The notes under the pieces: generated by a model
The model's database searches: none
The model's input: only the letters and a program-made list of their open reading frames with translations
Told to the model about the DNA's origin: nothing
Shown: one piece after another, positions 11,161-25,646 of the stretch
How the letters are laid out: every line of letters starts with the position of its first letter
Numbering within the stretch: position 1 is the stretch's first letter
Program-made: the position numbers and the translations under genes
Source: Chrysemys picta bellii
Lineage: Eukaryota
Assembly (NCBI RefSeq): GCF_011386835.1
Contig: NC_088798.1
Location: 25,358,001 to 25,422,000 of the forward strand
Direction: 5' to 3'
Length of the DNA stretch: 64,000 nt

Positions 11161-14100
11161 TTGGTGTTTATTATTTGAAGGAACCTTTGAAATTAGAAAA
11201 TAACATTAACGTTAAAAGGATTCATTCCATATGAAGAGAAATTCTTGTTGCACTACTGTAGAATTAAAATTAATAGGAGGTCTGGTTTCTATTAGTTAAA
11301 TATGACACACTATAATAACATATCTCAGCTTGACAGCGAGTACAGAGTGTTTATTCTTTCATGGAGACACAAGCCACTATATCAAACCTTCTTTCCACTT
11401 CTCCAAGTGAAGGAACTTATTTAAACTTATTAAACCATTTAAAGTGTGCTGCTTGTGCACTGAGCAGTGATGCTGTGAAAATGCCATTGTGGGGATTCTT
11501 GTTTATTGTGTCTCAGTGACTCAAGATCAGATTTGTTCCATTTACAAGTAGTAAGGATGTTACTATCTGCCATTCCTGCAAACACACTCAGGGATTTGAA
11601 AAGCAACGGGGTCTCTCTCCCATTTGCTTATCATCACCAGCAACCTTGATCCAGCTGGGCGGTGTCGCAGGTGTAGTCAGGGGTAGTTGTCAAAGGAAGC
11701 ATCAGATTTGTTTCATATTTTAAATAACGAGGATCATGCACTGATTTAAATGCAATTAACATAGCACAGGATTTGAAGGTGGGGTCACATCAAAGCTTGC
11801 CACTAGCTCTGCATTACATATTTCCTTAAACTCCTAAACATCCTGAAATGGACTGTTCCATTGGGATGTCCAAGTTCATTCTGTGTATTCACTCTGTAAG
11901 TGACAGAACGGAGTCCTCAGTCCAAAGCCTCATAATATATTTTCTTGCAACTGAACAGTCATTTCCTATCAGCTTCTTTTTATCTACATATCCTATTCTG
12001 TTCTTTTATTCTTTTCGGCTTTCTGCACTGCGCCCATTCCCATTGTATCTAATGCCTGCAAAAGGACCCGTCTTCTGAATCTTGGAACTTAATGGTGCTA
12101 GTCAGATACATGTAGCAGAATAAAAGGTGGGCTAGTTTGTCTCATTTTATATCTTAGTGAATGAAATAAAAACATCTTGGTCAAACAGACCATAAGCCAG
12201 GTATTGTCTCTTTTCTGTGTTCGTGCAGCCTCAGCACAATGAGTCTCCATTCCTGTTTGTGGCCCTAGGGTGCTACTATAATATAAACATTTAATAATAA
12301 CTTTAACAAATTTTAGTCCTTCCAGCATCTGAAAAAGGGAGATTTAAATGACATTCTCTGCAAGAATGTAAGTTCTTATGTAGCTTTATGTACTATTTGC
12401 TGTTCACCTACCTGTCCCCTGGCTGGCCGCATTTCCTTCTTTCAGATTTTTGGTGCAAGAAAAATATGTGAAATAGACATGGGTTGTTTTTCACTGTGCC
12501 ACTGCCCTTTCTGGGATGAATCAGAACTGCTTAGCTGTGTCTCATAGGCTTTATACAGCTGATAGCTGAAGAGGATTCTCCTTTTAGCTCAAGTGATAAA
12601 GGGCCTTTGCCTTCTCAGGCAGGAGAAAGTGAATTCTGTCTCTGCTGCCATTTGACATTCCAAGTGCAGATGGTGTGCAATAGAATAACAACTATGGAGT
12701 CCTAAGTGGCCACAGATTTGTTACAATATTTTTTTTTATCCTGGCCTTTCCTTCTGTTGCCTATTAAAGGGCTGCAGAGAAGTAAGTGGCTTTCGCCATT
12801 TCTCTCCCCCTGATTTTCCCAATATTTCAGTAAGAGTCAATGTGTCTTGTACTAGAGGAAGGAAAAGAGTGATGTTGTGTTACTTTTACCTACATTACCT
12901 ACTTCATGAGACAATGTAACGGGGAAGATAATTTGGGAGCCATATTCATTCAGCTGCTAAATTGATTATAAACTGTATGCTTTGTACAGCTTATGTTCTG
13001 TTCTCCTAAATGAAACAGCTTGTGGCTATTATATTCACAGTACAAGAAGGCTGGATCGCTCTTGAAGCCGTGATAGAAGTTTGCAATTTTAGTAATTGTA
13101 AAGCAAAAACAAAGGAGGTTGTGTCTGTACTCTCTCTTTATTCTCTAATGTGCGTACATTGTGCCATTTAGGTTAGATGGGCCAAAGAACTCAGCATTCA
13201 ATTTTATGATATTTCAGATTTGCAGAGATTGCAAGTGTATATATATTCTAAAACAGTTCAAAGACAGTTATGTGGGACTTTCAGAGATCTTTCTTCTGGA
13301 AAACTCAAATAGAAATGCGTTCACAACAGGCTTTTATATCTAGCAGTTCCCAAATACTACTGAGTATTATATCATCACTAGGGATGAGCGAATACTTTTA
13401 ACAAAAATATTTGTGAATAGTCACTTGAAGAAAAATTTTGAACTTGTTTGTGTTGGCTTCCTGCTCCGATTCTAGTAATCACATTCCCTTGGAGAAATGT
13501 TCAGTGAAAATTAAGTGAATGTTTGAAAGGTAAATAATTTTAAATGTAGAAGTTAACAAAGATAACAAATTGTTTGGGGATGAGTCACAAGCTTTAAAAA
13601 GTTAATATCCATTGTGATTTGTATATACAGCTCTAGTCACTACTCAAACTTCTGTCTATGTTCCTAAAAATCCTGAGATTTTGCTGTCTAGAATTATCCT
13701 ATTATAAAATTATACTAAATTTGCTTCAGAAATATTAAAAATTGCAGAGGTAGTACAGTAAGATTTCTATTTACCAAGTTTCCTTTATTCTTAAGATTTC
13801 ATGTCTTTGTTGCAATATATAGATATATTCCCTGTCCTAGGCTTTGGAAACAATTCCTAATTATTAATCATTGTGACAGAAAGTAACCAAAAGGTGGCAG
13901 CACTCTAATAATTTATTAAAGCTAGTGTTTAAAATCAAGTTTAGACAAGTTAAGGGGGAAGGTACTGTACATTTGAGGTCAGGCTTGAATTATGAGAGAT
14001 TACAAGTATTGGTTACAAGGTTCCCAAGATACATACATAGTACATAACCAGCATAGACCCAGATTGGGGTGCAGGAGTTTTTAAAGCGTCAGTGAATAAG

Positions 14101-17100
14101 TGATCTCGGGTATGTCACCCATAGAATGTATTTAGAGTCCACGTCAGTATTGTAGCGAACAGGTACATGGATGGGGTGCGTCTCTTGGTTTGTCAGGGAA
14201 GGAAGTGGGTTATTTCCCTGACCTGCGGTCTCATTTACTCATCCTAGTACTGACAGTGTCCCATGATGTGCTCCGTATAGATGGACAGCAGATTGGGAAA
14301 ACATGGACAGTAGATTGGGAAGAGTTACTATATTATCAGCACATGGATATTTGTTTTAGTTATCTTTGGTGGGCGGGAGATGAATGGGGGGAGATTCATA
14401 AAACAGACAGGTCAGAAAGAGCTTTGCAGCTTTCATACATAACAAAAAATACAAACTATATTTTCTATTATAAAAATGCAATATGCAGAACAAACACTCT
14501 GAATGTAGGAAATAAAGAACCAAAACTACTCTGATTGTAGTGGCTGGCCACTCCAAGTGGGAAAAGTTTGTTTCTTGTTAATGAAACACAATTTATAAAA
14601 GCTGTAAACTGAACTTATTCTAAAAATAACTCAAATCAAAAGTGCAATTAGCTCTCTACAACCAGGAAGTGAAATCCTAATTGCGGCTGACTCTCTGACG
14701 GAATCAGGCAATCAGCAAAGACACACAGAGAAATGTTCCCTTGTCTCATAATCCAAAAGAGTTAGTAAATCTAACTTTGGAGTTGTCAACCTTGTCAGGA
14801 TCCTTCTGAAGCCAAATAAGCTACTTCATGCCTCTACCCTCCAACCTTCCTGCTGACTTGCATTCAGTAGATGTATTGTTTGTGGGGGTTGGAGACAAGT
14901 CAACAAAGTGATCTCAACAGACGTCATCCAAAGCCCAGTAAAGTCAGAGAAAAGGTTCCCATTGACTTCACTGGATTTTGTTTCAGTCCCAATAAATATC
15001 ACAAGAGTGGCTGAAATTTGGAAATGGACAAAAATGCTGCTACGCTAGATTAATTTAGGGTGGGGAAGTTTTCAGGACATCAGGGTGGCTGGGTAGACAA
15101 TGAGAGCAAGTAGGGGCTGTTTCCCTTTGGGGAAAATTTGGCTTGCATTTTTCTATGTTTAGGAAAGGAACCCCCAATCAGCTTTTAAAGGAAAAAAAAC
15201 TCACCCACCCACCCACACAAAAATCCAAAGCACTGAAACTTTGAAATACTTCCCGAGTCAAATTATGTAACATCTTTCAAGACATAGAAAATCCCTTAGG
15301 AAAAGGTTTCTCATAATCAGGAATTTCCTTACAGGAGATTGCTCAATAATTCTTAAGCAACATTTCCATTATGTCCCTGTATCCATTCACTTGTTCTCTG
15401 TCACAGTATAACCATCTGTTATTGGTCTACTTTGCTATCAGATGTTTGTAAGGTAAATTCCAAGTAGGTACTTGATCCTGTAGATCCCTACTTACACATG
15501 TGGTTCTTTCCTACCCTTGTTCATAGCCCCATTTACTTCAATGGAACTATGGCACTAATATCCTATTTGTCTAATCAATGTGGTACCTGAGTACTGGATT
15601 ATTTGAATAGTTGAAGATTTTTAGGATTGGGCTCCAGCTTGTTCATTCCTTTTACACATTTTCTTTTTTACTTACTGTTTGTTTTTGGTGGCTTAAAGCT
15701 ACATGCTGAAGCTAGACAGTGTGAATAAATAAAGGAAACAAAACCAATGTGTGATTCATATGCTCTTGGCCTCTAAACCATAGTGACTGGTCCAAAGTAG
15801 GCAGGGTGAGCAGTGTCTGCCTTTTTTTACAGCACTCTTCACAAACCTCGGAGAGACAAAGGAAAACAAAAGGAGAAAAGAAGGGACCTGACCCAAAGAA
15901 AACGGTGGGATTTACTTACCCACTTTCCAAATGTCACCAGCTTCTACTACCCTTAAACCTAACCTGCTCTGGTGTTCTAATTACATGACTTCTTGTCACT
16001 GAGCTTTATTTTTTTTTAAAGAAAAACAAATAACAAAACAAAACAAAACATTATCTGTGCCAGTGAAGAATGGTCTACAGCTCCAGAAATTCGAGTCACT
16101 TTTTTTGATCTGCGTTGTTGTTGTCCAGACTGCTACTATGTATGAACGTTAAGGCACATCTTATTGTAATGGGCTTTATTATAACACCACAGCACCTGTC
16201 ACTGTTCTCTCTATCAGTGCAGTGTGATTAACTGTGAGCCAAACCCTGCAGACATTCCTCAGGCAATGGGAGTTTGACTTCAGTGGGAGTTATGCGTGCG
16301 GAACACCTACACCACTTGACCGAACAATATTAGGCGCACACATTCCTCAGCCTTCCTATTAAATAAACAAAATGTTGAGGCTTGTGGTGGATGGGACATC
16401 TGAGTATAACTTTATGAATATTTTCTGAACTTTTCACTGTCAAGTTTTCCCCAGTTTTATTAAATTTTACACGTAGCTATCAGAAAATGCTTTAAAAAGG
16501 AGTGAACAATAGCGAGTGGTGCCCTTTTTGTATCGAAAGAACAGCTGTCCCAATATTCTGCATTTTTGTGGATTGACGATTATTGTTGCACACCCACACA
16601 TACTTCCTGGATATTAATGGGTCTGTTAATAGCCTTACTCACTGGTCATAAATAATATTTATTTGTATTTTCTTTTTTCTATGTTCTTGTCACTTCATTT
16701 GTTGAAACCTACCTCTTTTCTTTTTAATGGAAGATTTTATAGCAGGGGAGAGAGATTGGACTAGCCCATTCATTTTTATTGGGACTTAAAGATTGTTCTC
16801 TTGCTTCTCTTAGGTGGTGTTCCAGCAGGGCCATGTGAAATCCTTGCAAAGCAATCCCAAACCACATGAAACTTGTTGGTTTGAGGTTTTTTAGAAATTC
16901 AAAATTCAGGTTGTGTTAATCAAAAGGCTCAAAAAACTTTCAAACCCTTTGCAGAAAAATGATGCAGAATTTGTGGTTTTGACATCCCACTGGGTGAAAT
17001 TTTACAGGATTTTGCTTTGAGATTTTTGGCTTTGTTTGATCCTGAAACTCAAAGTGAATCTTGGGTATGCAAACCTAATGTGGATCAAAACTAATGGAAA

Positions 17101-17156
17101 TGTTCACGCAAGCCCTAGGAGAAGTGAAACCACTGCATTTTGCACAGCTCTAATTA

Positions 17157-19700
17157 CACTGCTCTACAGCCAAAATGCTTCTGAAATAAATGTAGTCAAA
17201 CTTTACTAATTCTGGGTCACTGAGAACGAAAATGATGCTTAAAATTGTTGATTGCCTCTAGTTTTCAAGATATGCTATTGGGTCAGTATATACGACCCTT
17301 GACTTGGGAATGGCGGAGGATAAGTGAGTTATAAAGGGAAGGGATCTCAATTTAAACCAGACATGACTAAAATACATCTTTGACTGGATCTATGAATAAA
17401 TCTATGACTGGGTTTGGACAGTACTTGCTTTTTAGGCAAAACAATGAATGATGCAATCTGAAGCTGGTATTGCGTCATACATGATATGAATTGCATCATG
17501 TTATTCCTACAAGTCATGGATGATGCAATCATAACGAAGCTTACATCACTCTGCTGAACAAATTGCCCTATATCAGCTCTAGAAATCATACAGTGTCATG
17601 CTCTCTTATTTGTCAGTGTTTGATTTTGCAAAGGGACACATTTCTGTTTAGCCAAAGTGAGCAGAGATGCCTCGTACTTGTGTGAACAGTGCAGATAACT
17701 TCTGCTATGTTTGTGGTGAAGTGACTTTTGCATCACAAAAGCGCAGTATAACCACTATGGTTAAGAAAGCCTATCACCTTTATTTTGGCTGCAAAATTGG
17801 AGATCAGGACAAGAGGTGGGCTCCACACATATGCTGCAACACTTGTGCAACAAATCTTCACCAGTGGTTGAACAGGAAAAGGAAATCTATGCCTTTTGCA
17901 GTGCCAATGATTTGGAGAGAGCCAACAGATCATACCAGCAATTGTTACTTCTGCATGGTGCCTCCAGTTGGGAAAGGTGTGTCAAAGAAGAAAAAGTGGA
18001 CTGTGCATTATCCAAACATTCCATCAGCTAGATGCCCAGTACCCCACAGAGAAGGACTGCCGGTTCCTGATGCACCAGAATCATTCTCACTTGAGTCAGA
18101 TGAGGAAGAGGATGAAACTTCTGGTCATGAACCATCTATGTCACAGGACCCACATTTTCTCCCATCCTCCTCCTCTGAACCACACCTCATAACACAAGGT
18201 GAACTGAATGACCTTGTCAGGGATTTGGAACTACCCAAGAGTAAGGCAGAGCTGTTGGGCTCCAGACTACAGCAGTGGAATCTCCTGGCAGGTGATGTTA
18301 GGGTTTCCATGTTCCGTGACCGTCAAAAGGATCTTGTCCCATTCTTCTTCATGGAAGGTGATCTTGTAGCCTGCAACAACATCGATGGTGTGATGGCAGC
18401 CCTCAACGTTGTTCACGATCCAGATGAATGGAGACTGTTCATTGATTCATCGAAGACGAGTCTTAAAGCTGTTTTACTGCATAATGGCAATGTTTTGCCA
18501 TCAATTCCAGTTGGTCATGCAGTCCATATGAAGGAAACCTATGACAATATGAAACAACTTTTGAGGTGCATAAACTATGACCAACATCAGTGGCAGCTTT
18601 GTGGCAATTTGAAGGTTGTTGCTCTCTTGCTTGGTCTGCAGACTGGATACACAAAGTACTGCTGTTTTCTCTGCAAATGGGATAGTCGTGCAAGAGATTC
18701 CCACTACATCAAGAAAGATTGGCCACTCCGACAGTCATTGGAGCCTGGGAGGAAAAGTGTTCAGCATCCACCACTTGTTGAACCAAGGAAGATTTTGTTA
18801 CCACCCTTACACATCAAGCTGGGTCTGATGAAGAACTTTGTCAAGGCCATTGACAAAACACAAGCAGCTTTCAAGTACCTCCATGGAAAATTTCCAAGGT
18901 TAAGTGAAGCTAAGATAAAGGAAGGTGTCTTTGTTGGTCCTCAGATTCGTGAACTTCTTCAAGATGATGCATTTGACCATGCTCTGCGTGGCAAGGAAAA
19001 GACGGCATGGAAAGCCTTCCAGTTAGTGGCAATAAATTTTCTCGGAAACAACAAGGCAGACAACTACAGGTTGTTGGTGGAAAACCTCCTCAAGGCATAC
19101 AAAAGCCTTGGTTGCAACATGTCACTAAAGAGAAATTTTTTGCACTCTCGTCTAGATTTTTTTCCACTGAACTGCAGAGCAGTGAGCGACGAGCACGGTG
19201 AGCGATTTCACCAGGACATTGCAACAATGGAGAAACGCTATCAGGGCAAATGGAGCCCATCAATGCTTGCAGACTATTGCTGGACAGTGACAAGAGATGC
19301 TCCATTTAATGAATACAAGAGACAAGCCAAGAAGCGCCAAGTAGACACTGAATAGGACTAAACTATGTACAGAATAGTTTTTTGCCTTTTGTTTCATAAT
19401 ACATTTTATTTATATAACCCTTTTGCTGATTTTTCAAGTGTTACATAAACAGGACAAGTGAAATATTATCATGTAAAGCAACCATAAACACATGAAAAGA
19501 CCTAGGTTTACAATTTATGATTAAAACTCTACTATCTACACAATATACATAGACATAAAATGTAAAAACTTAAATATCTTAGAAACAGTAGCCAATCAGT
19601 TGTTTTAATTGTCATGTTTGAATTCAGCACATCAAAATACATAATAAATAGCACATTTTATCTCTGAAGCAGATGACTTCTCAAAAACTGTAGCCCAGTG
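17157..19700 (+). mobile_element. Full-length Chapaev3-type (CMC superfamily) DNA transposon
   Basis: Left end CACTGCTCTACAG; right end CTGTAGCCCAGTG (reverse complement CACTGGGCTACAG, 11/13 match). 3-bp TSD TTA (17154-17156 and 19701-19703). Imperfect subterminal inverted repeats and a single long transposase ORF. CAC termini with a 3-bp TWA TSD fit Chapaev3. Confidence 0.9.
17667..19355 (+). CDS. Chapaev3-like DDE transposase, 562 aa, uninterrupted but probably inactive
   Basis: N-terminal Cys/His-rich zinc-binding module (CYVC, HICCNTC, DHTSNCYFC), acidic linker, WRLFIDSS (D260), LCGNLKV (N314 at the expected second Asp), CCFLC C(2)C motif, LPPLH, SDEHGERFHQ (E512) and a basic C-terminal KRQAKKR. 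Confidence 0.9.
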   Translation: MPRTCVNSADNFCYVCGEVTFASQKRSITTMVKKAYHLYFGCKIGDQDKRWAPHICCNTCATNLHQWLNRKRKSMPFAVPMIWREPTDHTSNCYFCMVPPVGKGVSKKKKWTVHYPNIPSARCPVPHREGLPVPDAPESFSLESDEEEDETSGHEPSMSQDPHFLPSSSSEPHLITQGELNDLVRDLELPKSKAELLGSRLQQWNLLAGDVRVSMFRDRQKDLVPFFFMEGDLVACNNIDGVMAALNVVHDPDEWRLFIDSSKTSLKAVLLHNGNVLPSIPVGHAVHMKETYDNMKQLLRCINYDQHQWQLCGNLKVVALLLGLQTGYTKYCCFLCKWDSRARDSHYIKKDWPLRQSLEPGRKSVQHPPLVEPRKILLPPLHIKLGLMKNFVKAIDKTQAAFKYLHGKFPRLSEAKIKEGVFVGPQIRELLQDDAFDHALRGKEKTAWKAFQLVAINFLGNNKADNYRLLVENLLKAYKSLGCNMSLKRNFLHSRLDFFPLNCRAVSDEHGERFHQDIATMEKRYQGKWSPSMLADYCWTVTRDAPFNEYKRQAKKRQVDTE

Positions 19701-19707
19701 TTATAAA

Positions 19708-20082
19708 TAGACATGTTTCTGAGCCACAGAATTTGGATCTGGATTTGGATCAGAATATTTTCAAAGCTTCTTTTATTTGGATTTGGTGGTTCAGTTTAAA
19801 CCCCTGTATAAAGACAGATTAGAAACATGAGGTTCAGATCTGGGTATTGATGCTAATTTCCTAAAGATGTCTATGTTCAGATATTACGTTCCAGTTCGGG
19901 ATCATCTCTACTTATTGATTAAATATTAATTTGAGCTGCAAAGTTCAGATCTGGATTCTGCTACAAGTCCAAAATTTCCTTAAATTTTGAGTTCCAGATT
20001 AAGTTAGAGTTAGAATCCAAACTTCCACCCAGTGTCAGGCTGGGGAGCTCAGATATGGGTTCCCCATTAAGGCCCATCTCTA
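19708..20082. mobile_element. Old hAT-like MITE with degenerate GGATCTGGATT/GTTCAGATCTGG internal repeats
   Basis: Termini TAGACATG and CATCTCTA. Flanks GTTATAAA and GTAACAAA match at 6/8. Confidence 0.35.
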
Positions 20083-21782
20083 GTAACAAATACAAGTATT
20101 TATAATACGACGACTCAGTGAAGGTAGGTCATTGTTTCCAGTGGTTTCTCAATAGTGCGGCAAAGAAAAGGAAGGGAAGTAGTACTGTTACCTTATCCAA
20201 TGCAAACACAGATTAGGATCCAGATCAGTAATGGAAAGAGGGACACACCCCTTCCAGAGACTGTGGGTTCTTGCACCCCTCCCGATCCAATCATTTCTGA
20301 AGTGGTTTGAATCCAGGATGAAAGAGCAACAACAAAAAATCTTTCCCCTGTGTTCAAGTGCAACTTACCTAATCAAAATCAGCTTCAGCCAGTGCTGCAG
20401 GGGAGAGGGTTGCTCAGGTGCCAGCTATGGGCTCATCACAGAACAAAGCTTTTGTTTGTGTTACATTTATTTCATTGCATTGGCAGTAATAAATCTAACC
20501 CGAGTTATTGTTTGTCACCACAGGCACAAGAACAATGTTAATCAAATAGCTTAATAAATTCAAGCTTACCAAACTGGAACATATTTGCCAGACAGGCTAT
20601 GCCCATAATAAAAATATCCCACATGGATGCAGAATGGGAAATGTACTTGCCAGGTTAGGGTGTACGGAATAGCCATATTCCTTATCAATGAATCTTAACT
20701 ATGTCAGACCATGTGTGATTGGGGAGGGGAAACAAGTGGATGTCTTTGCTAAATGATCAGCAGGGGAAAAAGCTGTGTTTGAATAATGTAAACTGTCACC
20801 ATTAGATTTCAACATTTGAACCCCATTGAGGGGCTGCATACATCTCTGACACATGTTTGTCTGTCTCCAACCTCAGGAAGACAGCGTAGCTTTGGGTCAT
20901 ATTCAGTGGGTTTTCTTAACAACTGGAAGGGCTTGGAACTTAATTAAGAAGAAAACAGAATTTAAGCTTCAGGTTTTTGGAAACAAATCGGTGAGTCAGT
21001 AGCTACGTTTTCTGGGAAATCTGTCACAGAGAGAAGCCAGCTGGCAGAAAGCAGTTCTCTTATTTAGGGAAGTTTAATTTGTTATCCAATATAACCATGT
21101 CTCTGTGGTGTTGACTGTGATGATCATGTTGAAATGTTTGACTGCATCACTAGCGGTCAATGTTTGCCCTTGATGATGGACTGTGGCCCATCAGCCTCAT
21201 AGTGGTGACACGGCTGCTTTTGCTATGCTAAGTAGAGTGGTGAAGATGGGTGCATTGGCTGCAATAGTGAGTTTTGTGTCATCAGCTCTCTTCTTGTATG
21301 TGCCTCCAGTTCCGAAAGATGATGATCTGAAGCTGGATGAAAGCGTAGCTGCACATCTCCCTTCCCACCCCCATAGTTTTTTTTACATACTAGACTCTAG
21401 AGCTGCAACTACTCTAGTAGAGCCCTATGAGGAGGAAGCTACAACTGCGGTTTCTCCCTTGAAATGTGCTCTAAGCTAAGTCCTCACTCAGATTTCACAT
21501 TGCAGCTCATTTGTTACAGAAGGAAGTTTGGGTTAGTAGCTTGATTTGTAGTTTTCTTGTGTCTCCAAACCTCTTACCCTTTTCTCTGGTTGTCTGTTAG
21601 AAAGAACCCTCGCTTAATTTGTTGCAGTTCTCTCTGCACCTAAGCATGGATGGACCATAATTCTTGGGAAACTGGAGACTTTACATTCATACTACATAGT
21701 AGTTCATCTAATTCCTGGTAGCCAAGTGTGTCCACTTTATAGAGATCACCACCCCAAGGGAAATCATAGAAGAGAAATAACA

Positions 21783-22086
21783 GGGGGAACTGGTTGTCTC
21801 AGGGTATTTGTAAGTAGTAGCGAGTTTTCCCCCTGCATCACTGGCTCAAATTGGTTTTGGTTGGTATTGATCAAAAGCTTTTATGATCTGAAAGCTATGT
21901 CTGATGATCCATTCCAGTTCCCACCTATTAATAATCATCACTAACTTTAATAGTAACTAGCATCCTTGTTAGCAATCTCAGCAGAGATACAAAGGATTGA
22001 AGTGGCCACAAAGACTGAACTCCCCGTTCCCTCTACAGATGGCCCGTCAAGGTCAGAATTAAGACACATTGGCAGGGAAATGTGGT
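21783..22086 (+). mobile_element. LF-SINE, near full length and diverged
   Basis: tRNA-like head GGGGGAACTGGTTGTCTCAGGG...ATCACTGGCTCAAAT and body CCTTGTTAGCAATCTCAGCAGAGATACAAAGGATTGAAGTGGCCACAAAGACTGAACT...GGTCAGAATTAAGACACATTGGCAGGG match my recalled LF-SINE consensus. Confidence 0.7.
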
Positions 22087-23498
22087 GATGTCAATCCAGA
22101 ACTTTTCTCAAATACTATATTTGCTCAGTCAGACTCCTGTCTCTAAATCTTTCTGTCTTCACTACTGAATTTCAGCCTTCTGCTATCATTTGTTTCCTTT
22201 CCATCAGTGAATATGAGGCCTTTTTCATTCAAAGGATAGTTTCCATTTAGTTATAAAGTTTTAAAATTATTCTTCCTTTCAAATACAAGGGCAGATTCTC
22301 AGCTAATGAAAATGGTCATACCATCTTTGAGCTCAATTTACACCAGAAGAGAGTCTGCCCTCGGTGCTTTAAATTCAGAAGGAAAATGTTTCTTGAAACT
22401 TGAGAAAGTTTTGCAAGATGCAAATGAAAAACAAAATATTCTAAAGGTTTTGTGAAATCCATATACCCTTGAGTTCTCCCCTCTTCACTGTTAAAGGTCA
22501 CACTTTACATTAAAGATATTCTTAACAGTTTATACATGAATAGCTTTAATAAACAGTTAATCAATTATTATAGAGTCTAGCAGATCAATCTGTTGCTTAT
22601 TACCATGTCTGATAACCACTGATATTGTCTTCTACTGATGTGCTTATAACTATCCATAATACATAGTACTCATGTCTGTAACATGCTTATAATATCTATT
22701 AATAATTTATTATCCCTTTAGAAACGATATATAAATGTACTCTTAATATGTTGTATGACACTTTTTTAATCTTCCTACACATTTTGTTATGTCTAAGTCA
22801 TCGGCTTGGAATTTTTATTTTTAAAGCATAGCTGTGCTTATTGAAATAACCTTGAAAACACTTGAGTTTAGTAGAAGACACAACCTTGGCCCCAATAAAT
22901 ATAATATTTATATATACACATATAGGCGCACACACGCAAGCCATGAAAATATCTCTCCATTATTATTGCAACACTTCTTCACTTCCTGATTGCAAGTGAA
23001 CTCACCAGATCCAGATGCAGTTTCCCCCCTTGGAATTGATTCCCCAAGAGTGAATAGACATAACTTGTGCTGTAAATCTCTAAGCACTATGTATTAGGGC
23101 TGTCTCTGAAAGAAGACTGTGGTTAAAGCACAAAGGTTGAAATGTTCATTTGGTCATGTGAAATTTATCACACTGGTTTAAATTATTCATTTTCTTTTTT
23201 TGTACTTGCATGTTATGGGGTTTCCAGATGTGCATGAAAGAGGGACAGTATTACATACATTACCATTTGCTAGATGTACACTGGCTCATCTACACATACC
23301 AATTGTACTGCTTTTAACTATATTAGTATAGTTAAGTGGTACAACAGCCCCCTGCCCTCCTCCTCACACACAGCAGACACAGTTATATCAGCATAAAGGT
23401 GCATACATTAGTATAGCTTATTCCAAAAGGGAATAGTAATAAACTCTACCAATATGAGCACTTTTATATTGATATAAAAGCTATGTGTTGTTTTGACA

Positions 23499-23649
23499 TA
23501 GGGTGACCAGATGTCCTGTTTTTATAGGGACAGTCCCATTTTTGGGGACTTTTTCTTATATAGGCGCCTATTACCCCCCCCCCCCCCCCCCCGCTCCCTC
23601 CACACACACCCCGTCCCATTTTTTTCACAGTTGCTATCTGGTCACCCTA
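23499..23649. mobile_element. Short hAT MITE (TAGGGTGACCAGA family)
   Basis: TIRs TAGGGTGACCAGAT and ATCTGGTCACCCTA; TSD TTTTGACA / TTTTGATG. Confidence 0.9.
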
Positions 23650-24104
23650 TTTTGATGTAACTATTTCAGTAGAAAATTCTCTCTTGTTCCATCCCTCTTT
23701 TCTGTGCATTCATTTAAATGGGACCACTTGCAGAGTAAGGTAGTACTGAATGTGAGTAAGGGGGGCTGAAGTGAGGCTAGAATGACTCCACTTCTTAAAG
23801 TGGAATCTCATTTCCCAATAAAAAAGGTCTTTCTATATTTTAAAACTATTTTTATAACAATACATACATTTATTTTAATTTTGTTTCAAAACTATTTTTT
23901 ATCTACAGAATGGCTTTGGTGGTTAATAGTGCAAGGAGGAAATATCAGTGTTAGATAAAAATGTCAAAAGTGAAAGTGAAGACATAACATTCGCTGGGCC
24001 AGATTCTCACCTGGTGCAAATTGATATAGCTCCGTTGATTTCAATGGGACTATCTGTCTTGACTATTTGTATAGTCCCTATCTCCATAGTAATCAAGCAC
24101 CACA

Positions 24105-24300
24105 CAATCTTTATTTATCCTCACAATTACCCTGTGAGGTAGGAATATACTACTATACCATTTTACAGATGGGGAACTAAAGCAGAGAGAGTCTAATTGC
24201 CTCACCCTAGGTCAGACAGGAAATCTATAGCACAGCAGGGAATTGAAGCTGTTTTTTTAAAGTTCCAGGCAAATAACCTAACCACTGAACCATCCTTCCA
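24105..24300 (-). mobile_element. MIR/CORE-SINE fragment
   Basis: CCTCACAATTACCCTGTGAGGTAGG...CCATTTTACAGATGGGGAACTAAAGCAGAGAGAG, the CORE domain on the minus strand. Confidence 0.65.
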
Positions 24301-25646
24301 CCCTGTAGGCCTGTTCGCCATACCAATTTACAGCAGCTGAGCCTCTATCCTTCTTATTTGCACTTCTTCAAAGTAAAGGTGTACTGAGATTGAATTCCAT
24401 ACATCCTAAATACATTAACAAGAATAAAATGCAAATATTTAATACTTCTCTATATCTTTATTATAGGGGCATTTCAACCAGAGTTGGATCCCAGCACAGA
24501 GGTATTTGAATCTACTTAGGAAAATAGATTCCAGAAAACTCTAAAAAGCTTCTTTGAATTGGGAAAGTCTTTCTTTTTGTGTGATTTTAACACCCCAAAA
24601 TCATTTCCCAGCTCATTCCCTAGGCCAAATCCTGCTTGTCTTATTCACACTAGTATCTCCATTGAAACCAATCGCGTAGGAGGAGCAGTCGTTGACCAAA
24701 ATAAAAGTTTTACTCATTTCCCCACTTTTTTTTTCTTTCTTGAAAAACAAGTTGTTGTTTTTTTTAAAAAAAGTGTGCAATGCCCTTTATTTCCTGAGTG
24801 CTTGCCTCCTATATGCAACATTCTGACCTGGGTGGCTACTTTAGTCACTTGAAAGAAAAGAGTTCTTAAAAAAGGACAAACTATTGATCTCCTGGGTTCT
24901 GAGACTCTTGTTGGATCAAGAGTATCACTTCACAAGTTAAAAGTGCACGAGTGAGTCTCTTGTTAAGATTCATGGAACAGAAGTTACTAGTAGATACAGC
25001 TAATTGTTCATGTATTAATATGTTGGTTTTGTTTGGACATTATTTAAGCATTGACCTTAAAATATGTTAGACAAATTAAGGCCTAAAGAAGTACTTTAAA
25101 AATAATGTTGTCCCCAGACCAAGAACAGGTATTAAAAATGGAATACTTTAAATAACTATACTTTAAGCTTTTAATGGACAGGCGATTTCTTACTCATGAA
25201 GCTAAACTCCTTATCTTTGATAAAGGTGCAACTATATGCAAATTACAATGTTGCTGTATTTTGTATAGCACAATTTCAAACAATCTCTAAAAACTTCTTT
25301 ACAGAGTTAAATAATATGGTTAGAGAGATCACTGTAACAGAGGGGTAGGGTCTTAGGAAGTATAGGTAAGGGAGAAAAGATCTGTTATCAAACGAGATTT
25401 AAAAATAGATGGAGAGATGGTGAGGATGAGCAATATGGAAAGGTTGTTGTGAATTACTCTTAGGCCAAGAGTGGTGCTATTGTGCTAAAGAAGAGAGGAG
25501 ACTGGTGCTAGACAAATGGATGGAGCAGTGAGCCCAGAAGATGGAGATGTCGCTGATGTTGGGATATTTGTGAATATTGTTCTCTTACAGGCCATATAGT
25601 CCAATTACCAACTATAATATAGTTATCCATACTATAGTATTTAACC

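What the first reader, a model, noticed from the sequence alone, without database searches (positions are those of the whole stretch)
17157..19700. Structurally complete Chapaev3-type transposon with an uninterrupted 562-aa transposase in a turtle genome
Seen in the sequence: both ends (CACTG...CAGTG), an exact TTA TSD and one stop-free ORF. Every other coding TE here is a fragment. Established: Chapaev is a poorly characterised branch of the CMC (CACTA/Mirage/Chapaev) DDE superfamily, and I know of no biochemical characterisation of its transposase. Inference: such an intact copy is young and is a good template for reconstructing an active element. The protein joins a Cys/His-rich N-terminal module (C13/C16, H54/C56/C57/C60, H89/C93/C96) to the RNase H-like core. 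That module may be a PHD/RING-like reader or DNA-binding domain.
Basis: partly seen in the sequence, partly recalled or inferred. Interest (0 to 1): 0.8.

Follow-up and report, generated by a model that had tools for sequence, protein, structure and literature searches.

The report
Open-frame but disabled Chapaev3 transposon copy
This is one full-length copy of a very abundant turtle cut-and-paste jumping gene whose reading frame is still open, but whose enzyme has lost a catalytic aspartate and two zinc-binding histidines, so it is an ordinary neutral fossil and not a ready template for an active element.

Summary
Window 17157-19700 is a 2,544-bp element with CACTG...CAGTG ends, an exact TTA duplication inside an A|TTA|T target, and one 562-aa open frame (17667-19355).

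It is a Chapaev3-group DNA transposon. Independent copies in other turtles and in a marine metagenome end at the same bases with TWA duplications.

- The family is highly repeated. Summed contig depth over the element is about 10^4 times that of the flanks.
- This copy lies 1.4% from the family majority and evolves neutrally: coding and non-coding change are equal, and dN/dS is 0.66 (not significant).
- This copy has N314 where 64 of 64 homologs have Asp, at the end of strand beta-4 of the RNase H fold.
- It also has H490N and H495R in the C(2)C/H(3-4)H motif. The encoded transposase is almost certainly dead.
- Other turtle loci keep open 562-aa frames with all these residues.

The N-terminal Cys/His module is the published Chapa domain, ZAD-like and RAG1-NZD-like, not PHD/RING. 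The core fold matches RAG1 and Transib over about 365 residues (Z 18-19).

A lamprey copy is only 5.8% from the turtle majority, and a softshell-turtle copy 2.75%. That indicates horizontal transfer.

Another first-reader note on this same stretch had already flagged GNLK for GDLK.

The parts
17154..17156 (.). 5' target-site duplication TTA, preceded by A at 17153
   Evidence: The A|TWA...TWA|T pattern is described for Chapaev3 in PMC4079192. Other copies show TTA or TAA.
17157..17169 (+). 5' terminal inverted repeat CACTGCTCTACAG
   Evidence: I9. The same start is seen in L001, L002, L007, L008 and L009. Depth jumps at this base.
17157..17277 (+). 5' subterminal region, conserved at 83% even in the 18%-diverged marine family (L003); a likely cis-acting end
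   Evidence: window 17150-17277 against L003, 82.8%.
17449..17529 (.). Cluster of four TGATGCAAT / ATTGCRTCA motifs upstream of the ATG; a possible internal promoter or enhancer element
   Evidence: Conserved in the turtle copies, and 3 of 4 in the lamprey copy. Function not tested.
17667..19355 (+). Open 562-aa transposase frame, stop codon included
   Evidence: 2,183 or more homologs. 16,833 representatives at E<=0.001. No Pfam family.
17667..18071 (+). Residues 1-135, the Chapa (NZD-like) two-zinc module. Proposed site 1 is C13, C16, C57, C60 (ZAD-like); proposed site 2 is C5, H89, C93, C96.
   Evidence: Model pLDDT 94.5. ZAD domains are the top hits. RAG1 residues about 103-230 of eight species are hit. 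The ligand assignment is inferred.
18159..19352 (+). Residues 165-562, a RAG1/Transib-like transposase core: dimerisation/pre-RNase H part, RNase H fold, zinc motif and C-terminal domain
   Evidence: Model pLDDT 92. VIA-align Z 19.3 to RAG1 (363 residues, 3.4 A), 18.1 to HzTransib and 17.2 to BbRAGL. The next hits are P element 11.6 and Hermes 9.2.
18444..18446 (+). Codon 260, Asp, first catalytic residue, on strand beta-1
   Evidence: D in all 63 homologs that have a residue at this column (one of the 64 is gapped there). It lies in strand 91-97 of the model.
18606..18608 (+). Codon 314, AAT (Asn) where the family has GAT (Asp). This is the second catalytic residue, directly after strand beta-4, lost by a CpG-type transition.
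   Evidence: D in 64 of 64 homologs. G at 18606 makes up 93% of family depth in run X1. The change is private against L001, L002 and L006. Strand 146-149 of the model is followed by residue 150, which is N314.
18663..18674 (+). C333-x2-C336, the C(2)C motif, intact in this copy
   Evidence: The motif is described in PMC12730594.
19131..19151 (+). Codons 489-495, RNFLHSR in place of the family's IHFLHSH. H490N and H495R remove two of the three conserved His of the H(3-4)H motif.
   Evidence: (places 19132, 19134, 19150).
19191..19202 (+). E509 and E512 at the start of a helix; one of them is the third catalytic residue. Both are intact.
   Evidence: Each is E in 60 of 64 homologs. The model has a helix at 345-360. 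Which of the two is catalytic was not resolved.
19643..19648 (+). AATAAA, about 50 bp before the 3' end; a possible polyadenylation signal
   Evidence: Read from the sequence only.
19688..19700 (-). 3' terminal inverted repeat (reverse complement CACTGGGCTACAG)
   Evidence: Depth drops at this base, and contigs run on into unlike sequence at 19700-19704.
19701..19703 (.). 3' target-site duplication TTA, followed by T at 19704

Best explanation
Window 17157-19700 is a fixed, neutrally decaying, full-length copy of a high-copy Chapaev3-group cut-and-paste DNA transposon.

[quoted passage not shown] That core carries a C(2)C/H(3-4)H zinc motif.

By analogy with Transib and RAG1 (inferred, not shown):
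- an active family member binds the CAC-ended inverted repeats and nicks at the element ends;
- it releases the element through hairpins on the flanking DNA;
- it inserts the element with a 3-bp stagger into ATWAT, which gives the TWA duplication.

This particular copy keeps usable ends and an open frame, but encodes a dead enzyme. The second catalytic Asp is Asn (D314N), and two of the three motif histidines are lost (H490N, H495R). At most it could be moved in trans by an intact copy elsewhere.
For: Structure of the element and its family boundaries.

Chapaev3 hallmarks met:
- a TWA duplication between A and T, and CAC...GTG ends (PMC4079192; PMC3014272);
- a protein of 562 aa, like other Chapaev3 transposases;
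- a Chapa/NZD-like N-terminus (with PMC4411706 and the 2026 preprint).

Core fold:
- RAG1 Z 19.3, HzTransib 18.1, BbRAGL 17.2, well above the P element (11.6) and Hermes (9.2).
- The motif order D...D...C(2)C...H(3-4)H...E is as published for CMC, Transib and RAG1 (PMC12730594).

Dead enzyme:
- N314 against D in 64 of 64 homologs of 33-97% identity.
- The family majority letter at 18606 is G, 93% of depth in run X1.
- N314 sits right after strand beta-4, and D260 on strand beta-1, of a canonical beta1-beta2-beta3-alpha1-beta4-alpha2 fold.
- H490N, H495R, I489R, P501L, G504R and E337K are also present.

Neutral decay:
- 30 private substitutions, 1.19% in coding and 1.17% in non-coding sequence.
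- 17 non-synonymous to 7 synonymous changes, dN/dS 0.66, p 0.32; 13 of 24 are CpG-type transitions.
- 26% of simulated copies stay open under the same load of substitutions.

High copy number and fixation:
- 23,166 and 9,036 contigs were laid in the two DNA runs. Summed depth is 4-9 x 10^5 over the element against about 40 or 10 in the flanks.
- A contig of run X1 bridges the 3' junction with no difference.
- Flank contigs of run X14 run 18 and 26 nt into the element, and the flanks differ by about 1%.
Against: - The residue-level equivalence of D260, D314 and E509/E512 with RAG1 D600, D708 and E962 was not computed. It rests on secondary-structure position, motif order, invariance and a whole-core structural match.
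- The RAG1 residue numbers, and the matching D-x18-C-x2-C spacing, are from my memory of the RAG1 literature.
- Repbase and Dfam could not be searched, so the family name is unknown.
- The tool warns that summed contig depth is not a copy number.
- The X14 junction contigs overlap the element by fewer than the 31 letters the tool asks for, so shared occupancy in that taxon is likely but not proven.
- The hairpin mechanism is an analogy. No Chapaev transposase has been assayed.
Confidence: 0.85

Rival explanations
1. The copy is a young, autonomous element that is still active or nearly so, and its ORF is a good template for an active transposase.
For: - The frame is open, both ends and the duplication are intact, and the copy is only 1.4% from the family majority.
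- Family sequences are present in RNA libraries.
Against: - D314N at a position that is invariant in 64 of 64 homologs; H490N and H495R in the zinc motif; 17 amino-acid changes in all.
- The pattern of change is neutral.
- The RNA contigs carry the family majority letters rather than this copy's, and run on into unrelated sequence, so they look like read-through.
- The insertion is apparently shared with a taxon whose flanks differ by about 1%.
- Better-preserved 562-aa frames exist elsewhere.
Confidence: 0.04
2. The open frame is kept by selection. It would then be a domesticated, catalytically dead Chapaev3 transposase that serves the host as a DNA-binding or dimerising protein.
For: - The 562-aa frame is open although catalytic residues are lost, as in some domesticated transposases.
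- The zinc ligands of the Chapa domain are all intact.
Against: - Coding and non-coding parts have diverged equally (1.19% against 1.17%).
- dN/dS is 0.66 and not different from 1.
- Changes hit conserved positions throughout the protein.
- The inverted repeats and the duplication are retained.
- The exact protein is not in the 15-billion-protein collection, so no gene model was made for it.
- An open frame is expected by chance in about a quarter of such copies, and the family has thousands of copies.
Confidence: 0.04
3. The element belongs to another CMC/Transib lineage, for example a Transib with a short duplication or another CACTA-like family, and not to Chapaev3.
For: - The core fold is closest to RAG1 and Transib.
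- Some Transib relatives make 3-bp duplications (preprint 10.64898/2026.08.26.747230).
- Repbase could not be searched.
Against: - A TWA duplication between A and T, and CACTG ends, are as published for Chapaev3.
- The ends resemble Merrow (Chapaev3-1_PM) and the Anolis Chapaev3 inverted repeats.
- The N-terminal Chapa domain is reported to be absent from Transib transposases.
- The protein length matches other Chapaev3 transposases.
Confidence: 0.06

Closest known systems
Chapaev3 group of DNA transposons (Repbase; e.g. Merrow = Chapaev3-1_PM of lampreys, Chapaev3-1/2_AC of Anolis)
   Same: - A 3-bp TWA duplication between A and T, and CAC(T)...GTG ends.
- An element of about 2.4-2.5 kb, with a transposase of about 561-562 aa carrying an N-terminal Chapa zinc module.
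- A patchy distribution, with very high identity between distant hosts.
   Different: - It is not Merrow. The Merrow_PM ends read CACTGTGTAACAATTTT, and the Merrow_LC primers are absent.
- The frame is a single exon, whereas Merrow is described with two exons (78 + 484 aa).
- It is far younger (1.4-2.8% from the majority) and far more abundant than the Anolis families, which are 12-35% diverged with 4-988 copies.
- Turtles are not among the hosts in the papers found.
RAG1 / RAG1-like / Transib transposases (PDB 4WWX, 6XNX, 6PQX, 6B40)
   Same: - Whole-core fold, with about 346-375 residues aligned at Z 17-19.
[quoted passage not shown]
- CAC-ended recognition sequences.
- An NZD-like N-terminal zinc domain, as in RAG1 and RAG1L.
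   Different: - Sequence identity is only 9-12%, and no sequence-level hit to any solved structure was found.
- The duplication is 3 bp, not 5 bp.
- The model alignment begins at RAG1 residue 446-480 depending on the entry, so it does not cover the RING or nonamer-binding regions.
- No second (RAG2-like) long ORF lies within the element.
ZAD (zinc-finger-associated domain) of Drosophila M1BP, Grauzone and Pita
   Same: Residues 11-72 (C13, C16 ... C57, C60) superpose on ZAD domains (60 residues, rmsd 2.2 A, Z 5.3; Foldseek probability 0.98). ZADs take the top six places of only eight chains with Z>=2 among 48,161.
   Different: - The scores are modest.
- The Chapa domain has a second conserved Cys/His set (C5, H89, C93, C96) and about 60 further residues that ZAD lacks.
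- ZAD is a dimerisation module of transcription factors, not part of a transposase.

Membership tests
Chapaev3 (CMC-Chapaev-3) | 3-bp target-site duplication of consensus TWA, inserted between A and T | tested here: met
   Window a|TTA...TTA|t. L002 and L003 a|TAA...TAA|t. L008 and L009 a|TTA...TTA|t. The feature is as stated in PMC4079192.
Chapaev3 (CMC-Chapaev-3) | Terminal inverted repeats with invariable 5'-CAC...GTG-3' termini | tested here: met
   CACTG...CAGTG in the window and in all full copies compared.
Chapaev3 (CMC-Chapaev-3) | N-terminal Chapa zinc-finger domain | tested here: met
   Confident model. ZAD-like module, and RAG1 residues about 103-230 hit in eight species. Conserved C5, C13, C16, C57, C60, C93 and C96. 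The domain is defined in PMC4411706 and in the 2026 preprint.
Chapaev3 (CMC-Chapaev-3) | DDE catalytic triad | tested here: not met
   The family has it: D260 in all 63 homologs with a residue there, D314 in 64 of 64, E509 and E512 in 60 of 64. This copy has N314 through a private G-to-A change. It is a member by descent with a broken triad.
CMC / CMCT clade | [quoted passage not shown] | tested here: inconclusive
   C333-x2-C336 is present. The family has H490, H493 and H495; this copy has N490, H493 and R495. The motif is defined in PMC12730594. So it is met by the family and lost in this copy.
Chapaev3 (CMC-Chapaev-3) | Significant sequence similarity to Repbase/Dfam Chapaev3 consensus sequences or RepeatPeps proteins | not testable with these tools
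   No Repbase or Dfam library is available. The only indirect evidence is 13 to 15 of 17 matches of the inverted repeats to the Merrow_PM ends printed in the supplement.
Merrow family (Chapaev3-1_PM) | At least 80% nucleotide identity to Merrow, with the Merrow termini | tested here: not met
   The Merrow_PM ends differ, and both Merrow_LC PCR primers are absent (up to 4 mismatches allowed) from the window element and from the lamprey copy L006.
Transib superfamily in the strict sense | 5-bp target-site duplication; no N-terminal NZD-like domain | tested here: not met
   The duplication is 3 bp and a Chapa domain is present. The core fold is nevertheless Transib/RAG1-like.
   No PHD or RING chain scored Z>=2 among 48,161 representatives. 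Only ZAD domains, SAP30L and one FYVE domain (Z 2.1) did. Foldseek gave the same picture.

The most novel reading that the evidence does not exclude
The family, not this copy, may still hold active members in turtles. It is young (copies 1.4-2.8% from the majority) and abundant (about 10^4 copy equivalents). Natural 562-aa frames at other loci keep every catalytic and zinc residue. It is nearly identical in a softshell turtle and close in a lamprey.

If one of those frames is active, turtles would carry a vertebrate-resident transposase that is RAG1-like from the NZD through the core and has no RAG2-like partner. Its chemistry (hairpin or not, role of the NZD/Chapa domain) could then be tested directly.

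A second, separate possibility concerns the intact copy shared by Chrysemys and Malaclemys (L008/L009). Its dN/dS is 0.36, so it may be under selection.
Probability: 0.15. Interest if true: 0.7.

Novelty: new member of a known kind. Interest (0 to 1): 0.33.

Why it matters
For this copy, little: it is a neutral fossil of a known kind of transposon, and its open frame is misleading because the active site is broken.

For the family, three points are useful.
- It is a very abundant, recently amplified Chapaev3 lineage in turtles, a host group not listed in the papers found. It shows lamprey-to-turtle and turtle-to-turtle similarity that only horizontal transfer explains.
- The predicted structure ties a Chapaev3 transposase to RAG1 and Transib over the whole core as well as the N-terminal zinc domain. 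This bears on the debate over whether Chapaev belongs with CMC or with Transib, and on the origin of the RAG1 N-terminus.
- Pfam has no model for a family with more than 16,000 representative sequences.

Tried and rejected
- Pfam scan of the protein: no family, even at E<=1.
- Profile search against the sequences of solved structures: only chance hits at E>0.8, so the RAG1 link is visible by fold only.
- Merrow membership: I first assumed it from the 91% identity to a lamprey copy and from 78 + 484 = 562 aa. I rejected it after reading the Merrow ends and primers in the supplement.
- PHD/RING reading of the N-terminus: rejected.
- Other copies of the element in the window: none.
- Rfam scan of 12000-25000: nothing.
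- The sigma-70 promoter and terminator scan does not apply to a vertebrate element and was ignored.
- Residue-by-residue superposition on RAG1: not possible, because the tools return only aligned ranges and I had no tool-supplied RAG1 sequence for a profile comparison.
- The first BLAST script returned nothing because it picked the wrong record; this was corrected.
- No complex prediction was run, since the report makes no binding claim.
A majority sequence was used inside scripts only, to measure distances and for the open-frame simulation.
Full report
**Observation.**
- CACTG begins at 17157 and CAGTG ends at 19700. TTA lies on both sides (17154-17156 and 19701-19703).
- A single ATG-to-stop frame at 17667-19355 (+) encodes 562 aa.
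- The base before the 5' TTA is A and the base after the 3' TTA is T, so the target was ATTAT.
- The terminal repeat is short: 13 nt with 11 matching.
- The frame is the only ORF above 208 aa in the 64-kb window.
- The element is not repeated elsewhere in the window.

**The ends are family boundaries.**
I fetched independent copies through their proteins:
- a metagenome contig (L001);
- two Chrysemys picta loci (L002, L009);
- a Malaclemys terrapin locus (L008);
- a Pelodiscus sinensis locus (L007);
- marine-metagenome contigs (L003-L005);
- a Lethenteron reissneri locus (L006).

The copies compared at their ends (L001, L002, L003 and L006-L009) all begin with CACTG next to unrelated flanks. 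The full ones have TTA or TAA duplications between A and T.

I then laid the contigs of two DNA runs on 16457-20400.
- The flanks have depth of about 40 (X1) and about 10 (X14).
- Summed depth inside 17157-19700 is 4-9 x 10^5, with sharp edges. It comes from 23,166 and 9,036 laid contigs.
- Dozens of contigs run on into mutually unlike sequence at 17151-17157 and 19700-19704.
- The tool warns that summed depth is not a copy number. Even so, the family is clearly highly repeated, on the order of 10^4 copy equivalents.
- Joints such as 17971 to 19311 occur in both runs. They show internal-deletion derivatives.

**What it is.**
- Pfam has no model for the protein. The protein nevertheless has 2,183 or more close homologs and 16,833 representatives at E<=0.001, in animals from insects to frogs and lampreys.
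- The papers found give the Chapaev3 hallmarks as a TWA duplication between A and T, CAC...GTG ends, an element of about 2.4 kb, a transposase of about 561-562 aa, and an N-terminal Chapa zinc domain (PMC4079192, PMC3014272, PMC4411706). All are met here.
- It is not the Merrow family. The Merrow_PM ends and the Merrow_LC primers printed in the supplement are absent.
- Repbase and Dfam could not be searched, so I cannot say whether this family is already deposited.

**Protein anatomy, N-terminus.**
Residues 1-135 fold confidently (pLDDT 94.5).
- Against 48,161 solved chains, only eight reach Z>=2, and the top six are ZAD domains. The best aligns 60 residues at 2.2 A with Z 5.3, over residues 11-72. 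Foldseek agrees.
- Against the Swiss-Prot models, the hits other than ZAD proteins are RAG1 residues about 103-230 in eight vertebrates. They have TM by query 0.41-0.53 and weak E-values.
- This independently matches the 2026 preprint. [quoted passage not shown]
- From conservation I propose C13, C16, C57 and C60 for the first site, and C5, H89, C93 and C96 for the second. The second site would then have one N-terminal and three C-terminal ligands, the preprint's type I. This assignment is inferred.
- A PHD/RING reading is not supported.

**Protein anatomy, core.**
Residues 165-562 also fold confidently (pLDDT 92, pTM 0.88).
- The best structural matches are RAG1 (Z 19.3, 363 residues, 3.4 A, model 10-386 on RAG1 460-1007), HzTransib (Z 18.1) and amphioxus RAG1-like (Z 17.2).
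- After a gap come the P element (11.6), Hermes (9.2) and the retroviral integrases (about 8).
- Sequence identity to these is only 9-12%, and a sequence profile finds no solved relative.
- The motif order is D...D...C(2)C...H(3-4)H...E, as published for CMC, Transib and RAG1 (PMC12730594).
- The model has the canonical RNase H order beta1-beta2-beta3-alpha1-beta4-alpha2. D260 lies on beta-1, residue 314 directly follows beta-4, and E509 and E512 lie at the start of a later helix.

**This copy is disabled.**
- Residue 314 is Asn in the window and Asp in 64 of 64 homologs of 33-97% identity.
- The family majority at 18606 is G, 93% of depth in X1. The change is private relative to L001, L002 and the lamprey copy, and it is a CpG-type transition.
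- Codons 489-495 read RNFLHSR where the family has IHFLHSH. Two of the three motif histidines are therefore lost.
- E337K, P501L and G504R hit conserved positions too.
- Another first-reader note on this same stretch (s1-330053) had flagged GNLK and KRNFLHSR. My alignment and the read evidence confirm it.
- Asp-to-Asn at a DDE carboxylate is expected to abolish catalysis. This rests on established knowledge of DDE enzymes and was not tested here.

**Neutral decay and age.**
- The copy has 30 private substitutions: 1.19% in coding and 1.17% in non-coding sequence.
- Against the family majority there are 17 non-synonymous and 7 synonymous changes. dN/dS is 0.66 (p 0.32), and 13 of the 24 are CpG-type.
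- The copy is 1.38% from the majority of six turtle copies.
- A simulation with the same load leaves the frame open in 26% of trials. In a family of thousands of copies, open frames are therefore expected.
- They are in fact seen. P0278 (Malaclemys) and P0281 (Chrysemys) are 562 aa and keep D260, D314, C333, C336, H490, H493, H495, E509 and E512.
- The insertion is present in run X1, where a contig bridges the 3' junction without a difference.
- It is apparently also present in run X14, from a different coded organism. There the flank contigs differ by about 1% and run 18 and 26 nt into the element.
- For scale, the orthologous Malaclemys/Chrysemys copy pair differs by 2.0%. I therefore read the insertion as many millions of years old, in a slowly evolving genome. 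Absolute dates would need a calibrated rate.

**Horizontal transfer.**
- The Pelodiscus copy is 2.75% from the mostly emydid majority. The lamprey copy is 5.8% from it over 2.4 kb, non-coding ends included.
- The 90%-identity protein cluster also holds Macrochelys proteins. A second 90%-identity cluster, that of P0059, holds a Gopherus protein.
- Such similarity cannot be vertical between softshell and hard-shelled turtles, let alone between turtles and lampreys.
- Repeated horizontal transfer is already documented for other Chapaev3 families (PMC4079192). Turtles are not among the hosts in the papers I found.
- Only one lamprey copy and one Pelodiscus copy were examined.

**Expression.**
Contigs from two RNA libraries tile the element. 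They carry the family majority letters, and some run on into unrelated sequence. This fits read-through or other copies, and says nothing specific about this locus.

**Verdict.**
- The claim that this copy is a good template for an active element is not supported.
- The zinc module is the known Chapa/NZD-like domain.
- The copy itself is ordinary.
- The family deserves a note for its abundance and youth in turtles, its horizontal spread, and its RAG1-like fold.

Noticed in passing
window 17449-17529: There are four copies of the 9-bp motif TGATGCAAT / ATTGCRTCA within 81 bp, 140-220 bp upstream of the transposase ATG. They are conserved in the turtle copies, and 3 of 4 are conserved in the lamprey copy; the marine family lacks them. 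From memory this motif is the C/EBP-ATF composite (amino-acid response) element, so the element may carry a bZIP-driven internal promoter.
   Followed up: partly
L008:1489-4020 (Malaclemys terrapin CM051175.1) and L009:1489-3942 (Chrysemys picta CM062336.1): This is one orthologous insertion shared by two emydid genera: same flanks, same a|TTA...TTA|t. Both copies have open 562-aa frames that keep all catalytic and zinc residues. There are 16 non-synonymous and 12 synonymous differences (dN/dS 0.36, p 0.009 by simple site counts). NCBI annotates the Chrysemys frame as 'NCBP3 isoform X2'. This could be selection (domestication) or chance in a slowly evolving genome.
   Followed up: partly
L007:2025-4533 (Pelodiscus sinensis) and L006:2517-6355 (Lethenteron reissneri): The softshell-turtle copy is 2.75%, and the lamprey copy 5.8%, from the majority of turtle copies over the whole element, non-coding ends included. 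This implies horizontal transfer among turtle lineages and between turtles and lampreys. The lamprey copy is interrupted by about 1.4 kb of other DNA.
   Followed up: partly
window 17971-19311 and other joints inside 17157-19700: Contigs in two DNA runs join 17971 to 19311, skipping 1,339 bp. Many other internal joints are seen. Internally deleted, non-autonomous derivatives of the family therefore circulate in these genomes.
   Followed up: no
window 17667-19355 (protein family): Pfam-A has no model that matches this transposase at E<=1, although 16,833 cluster representatives match it at E<=0.001. NCBI gene models often fuse copies to host genes; names seen include boule-like, NMNAT3 isoform and NCBP3 isoform.
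   Followed up: partly
window 18101-18102: Copies L001 and L002, and an RNA contig, carry an extra in-frame GAGGAA (two Glu) in the acidic linker. The window, the lamprey copy and the marine copy lack it. This is a length polymorphism within the family.
   Followed up: no
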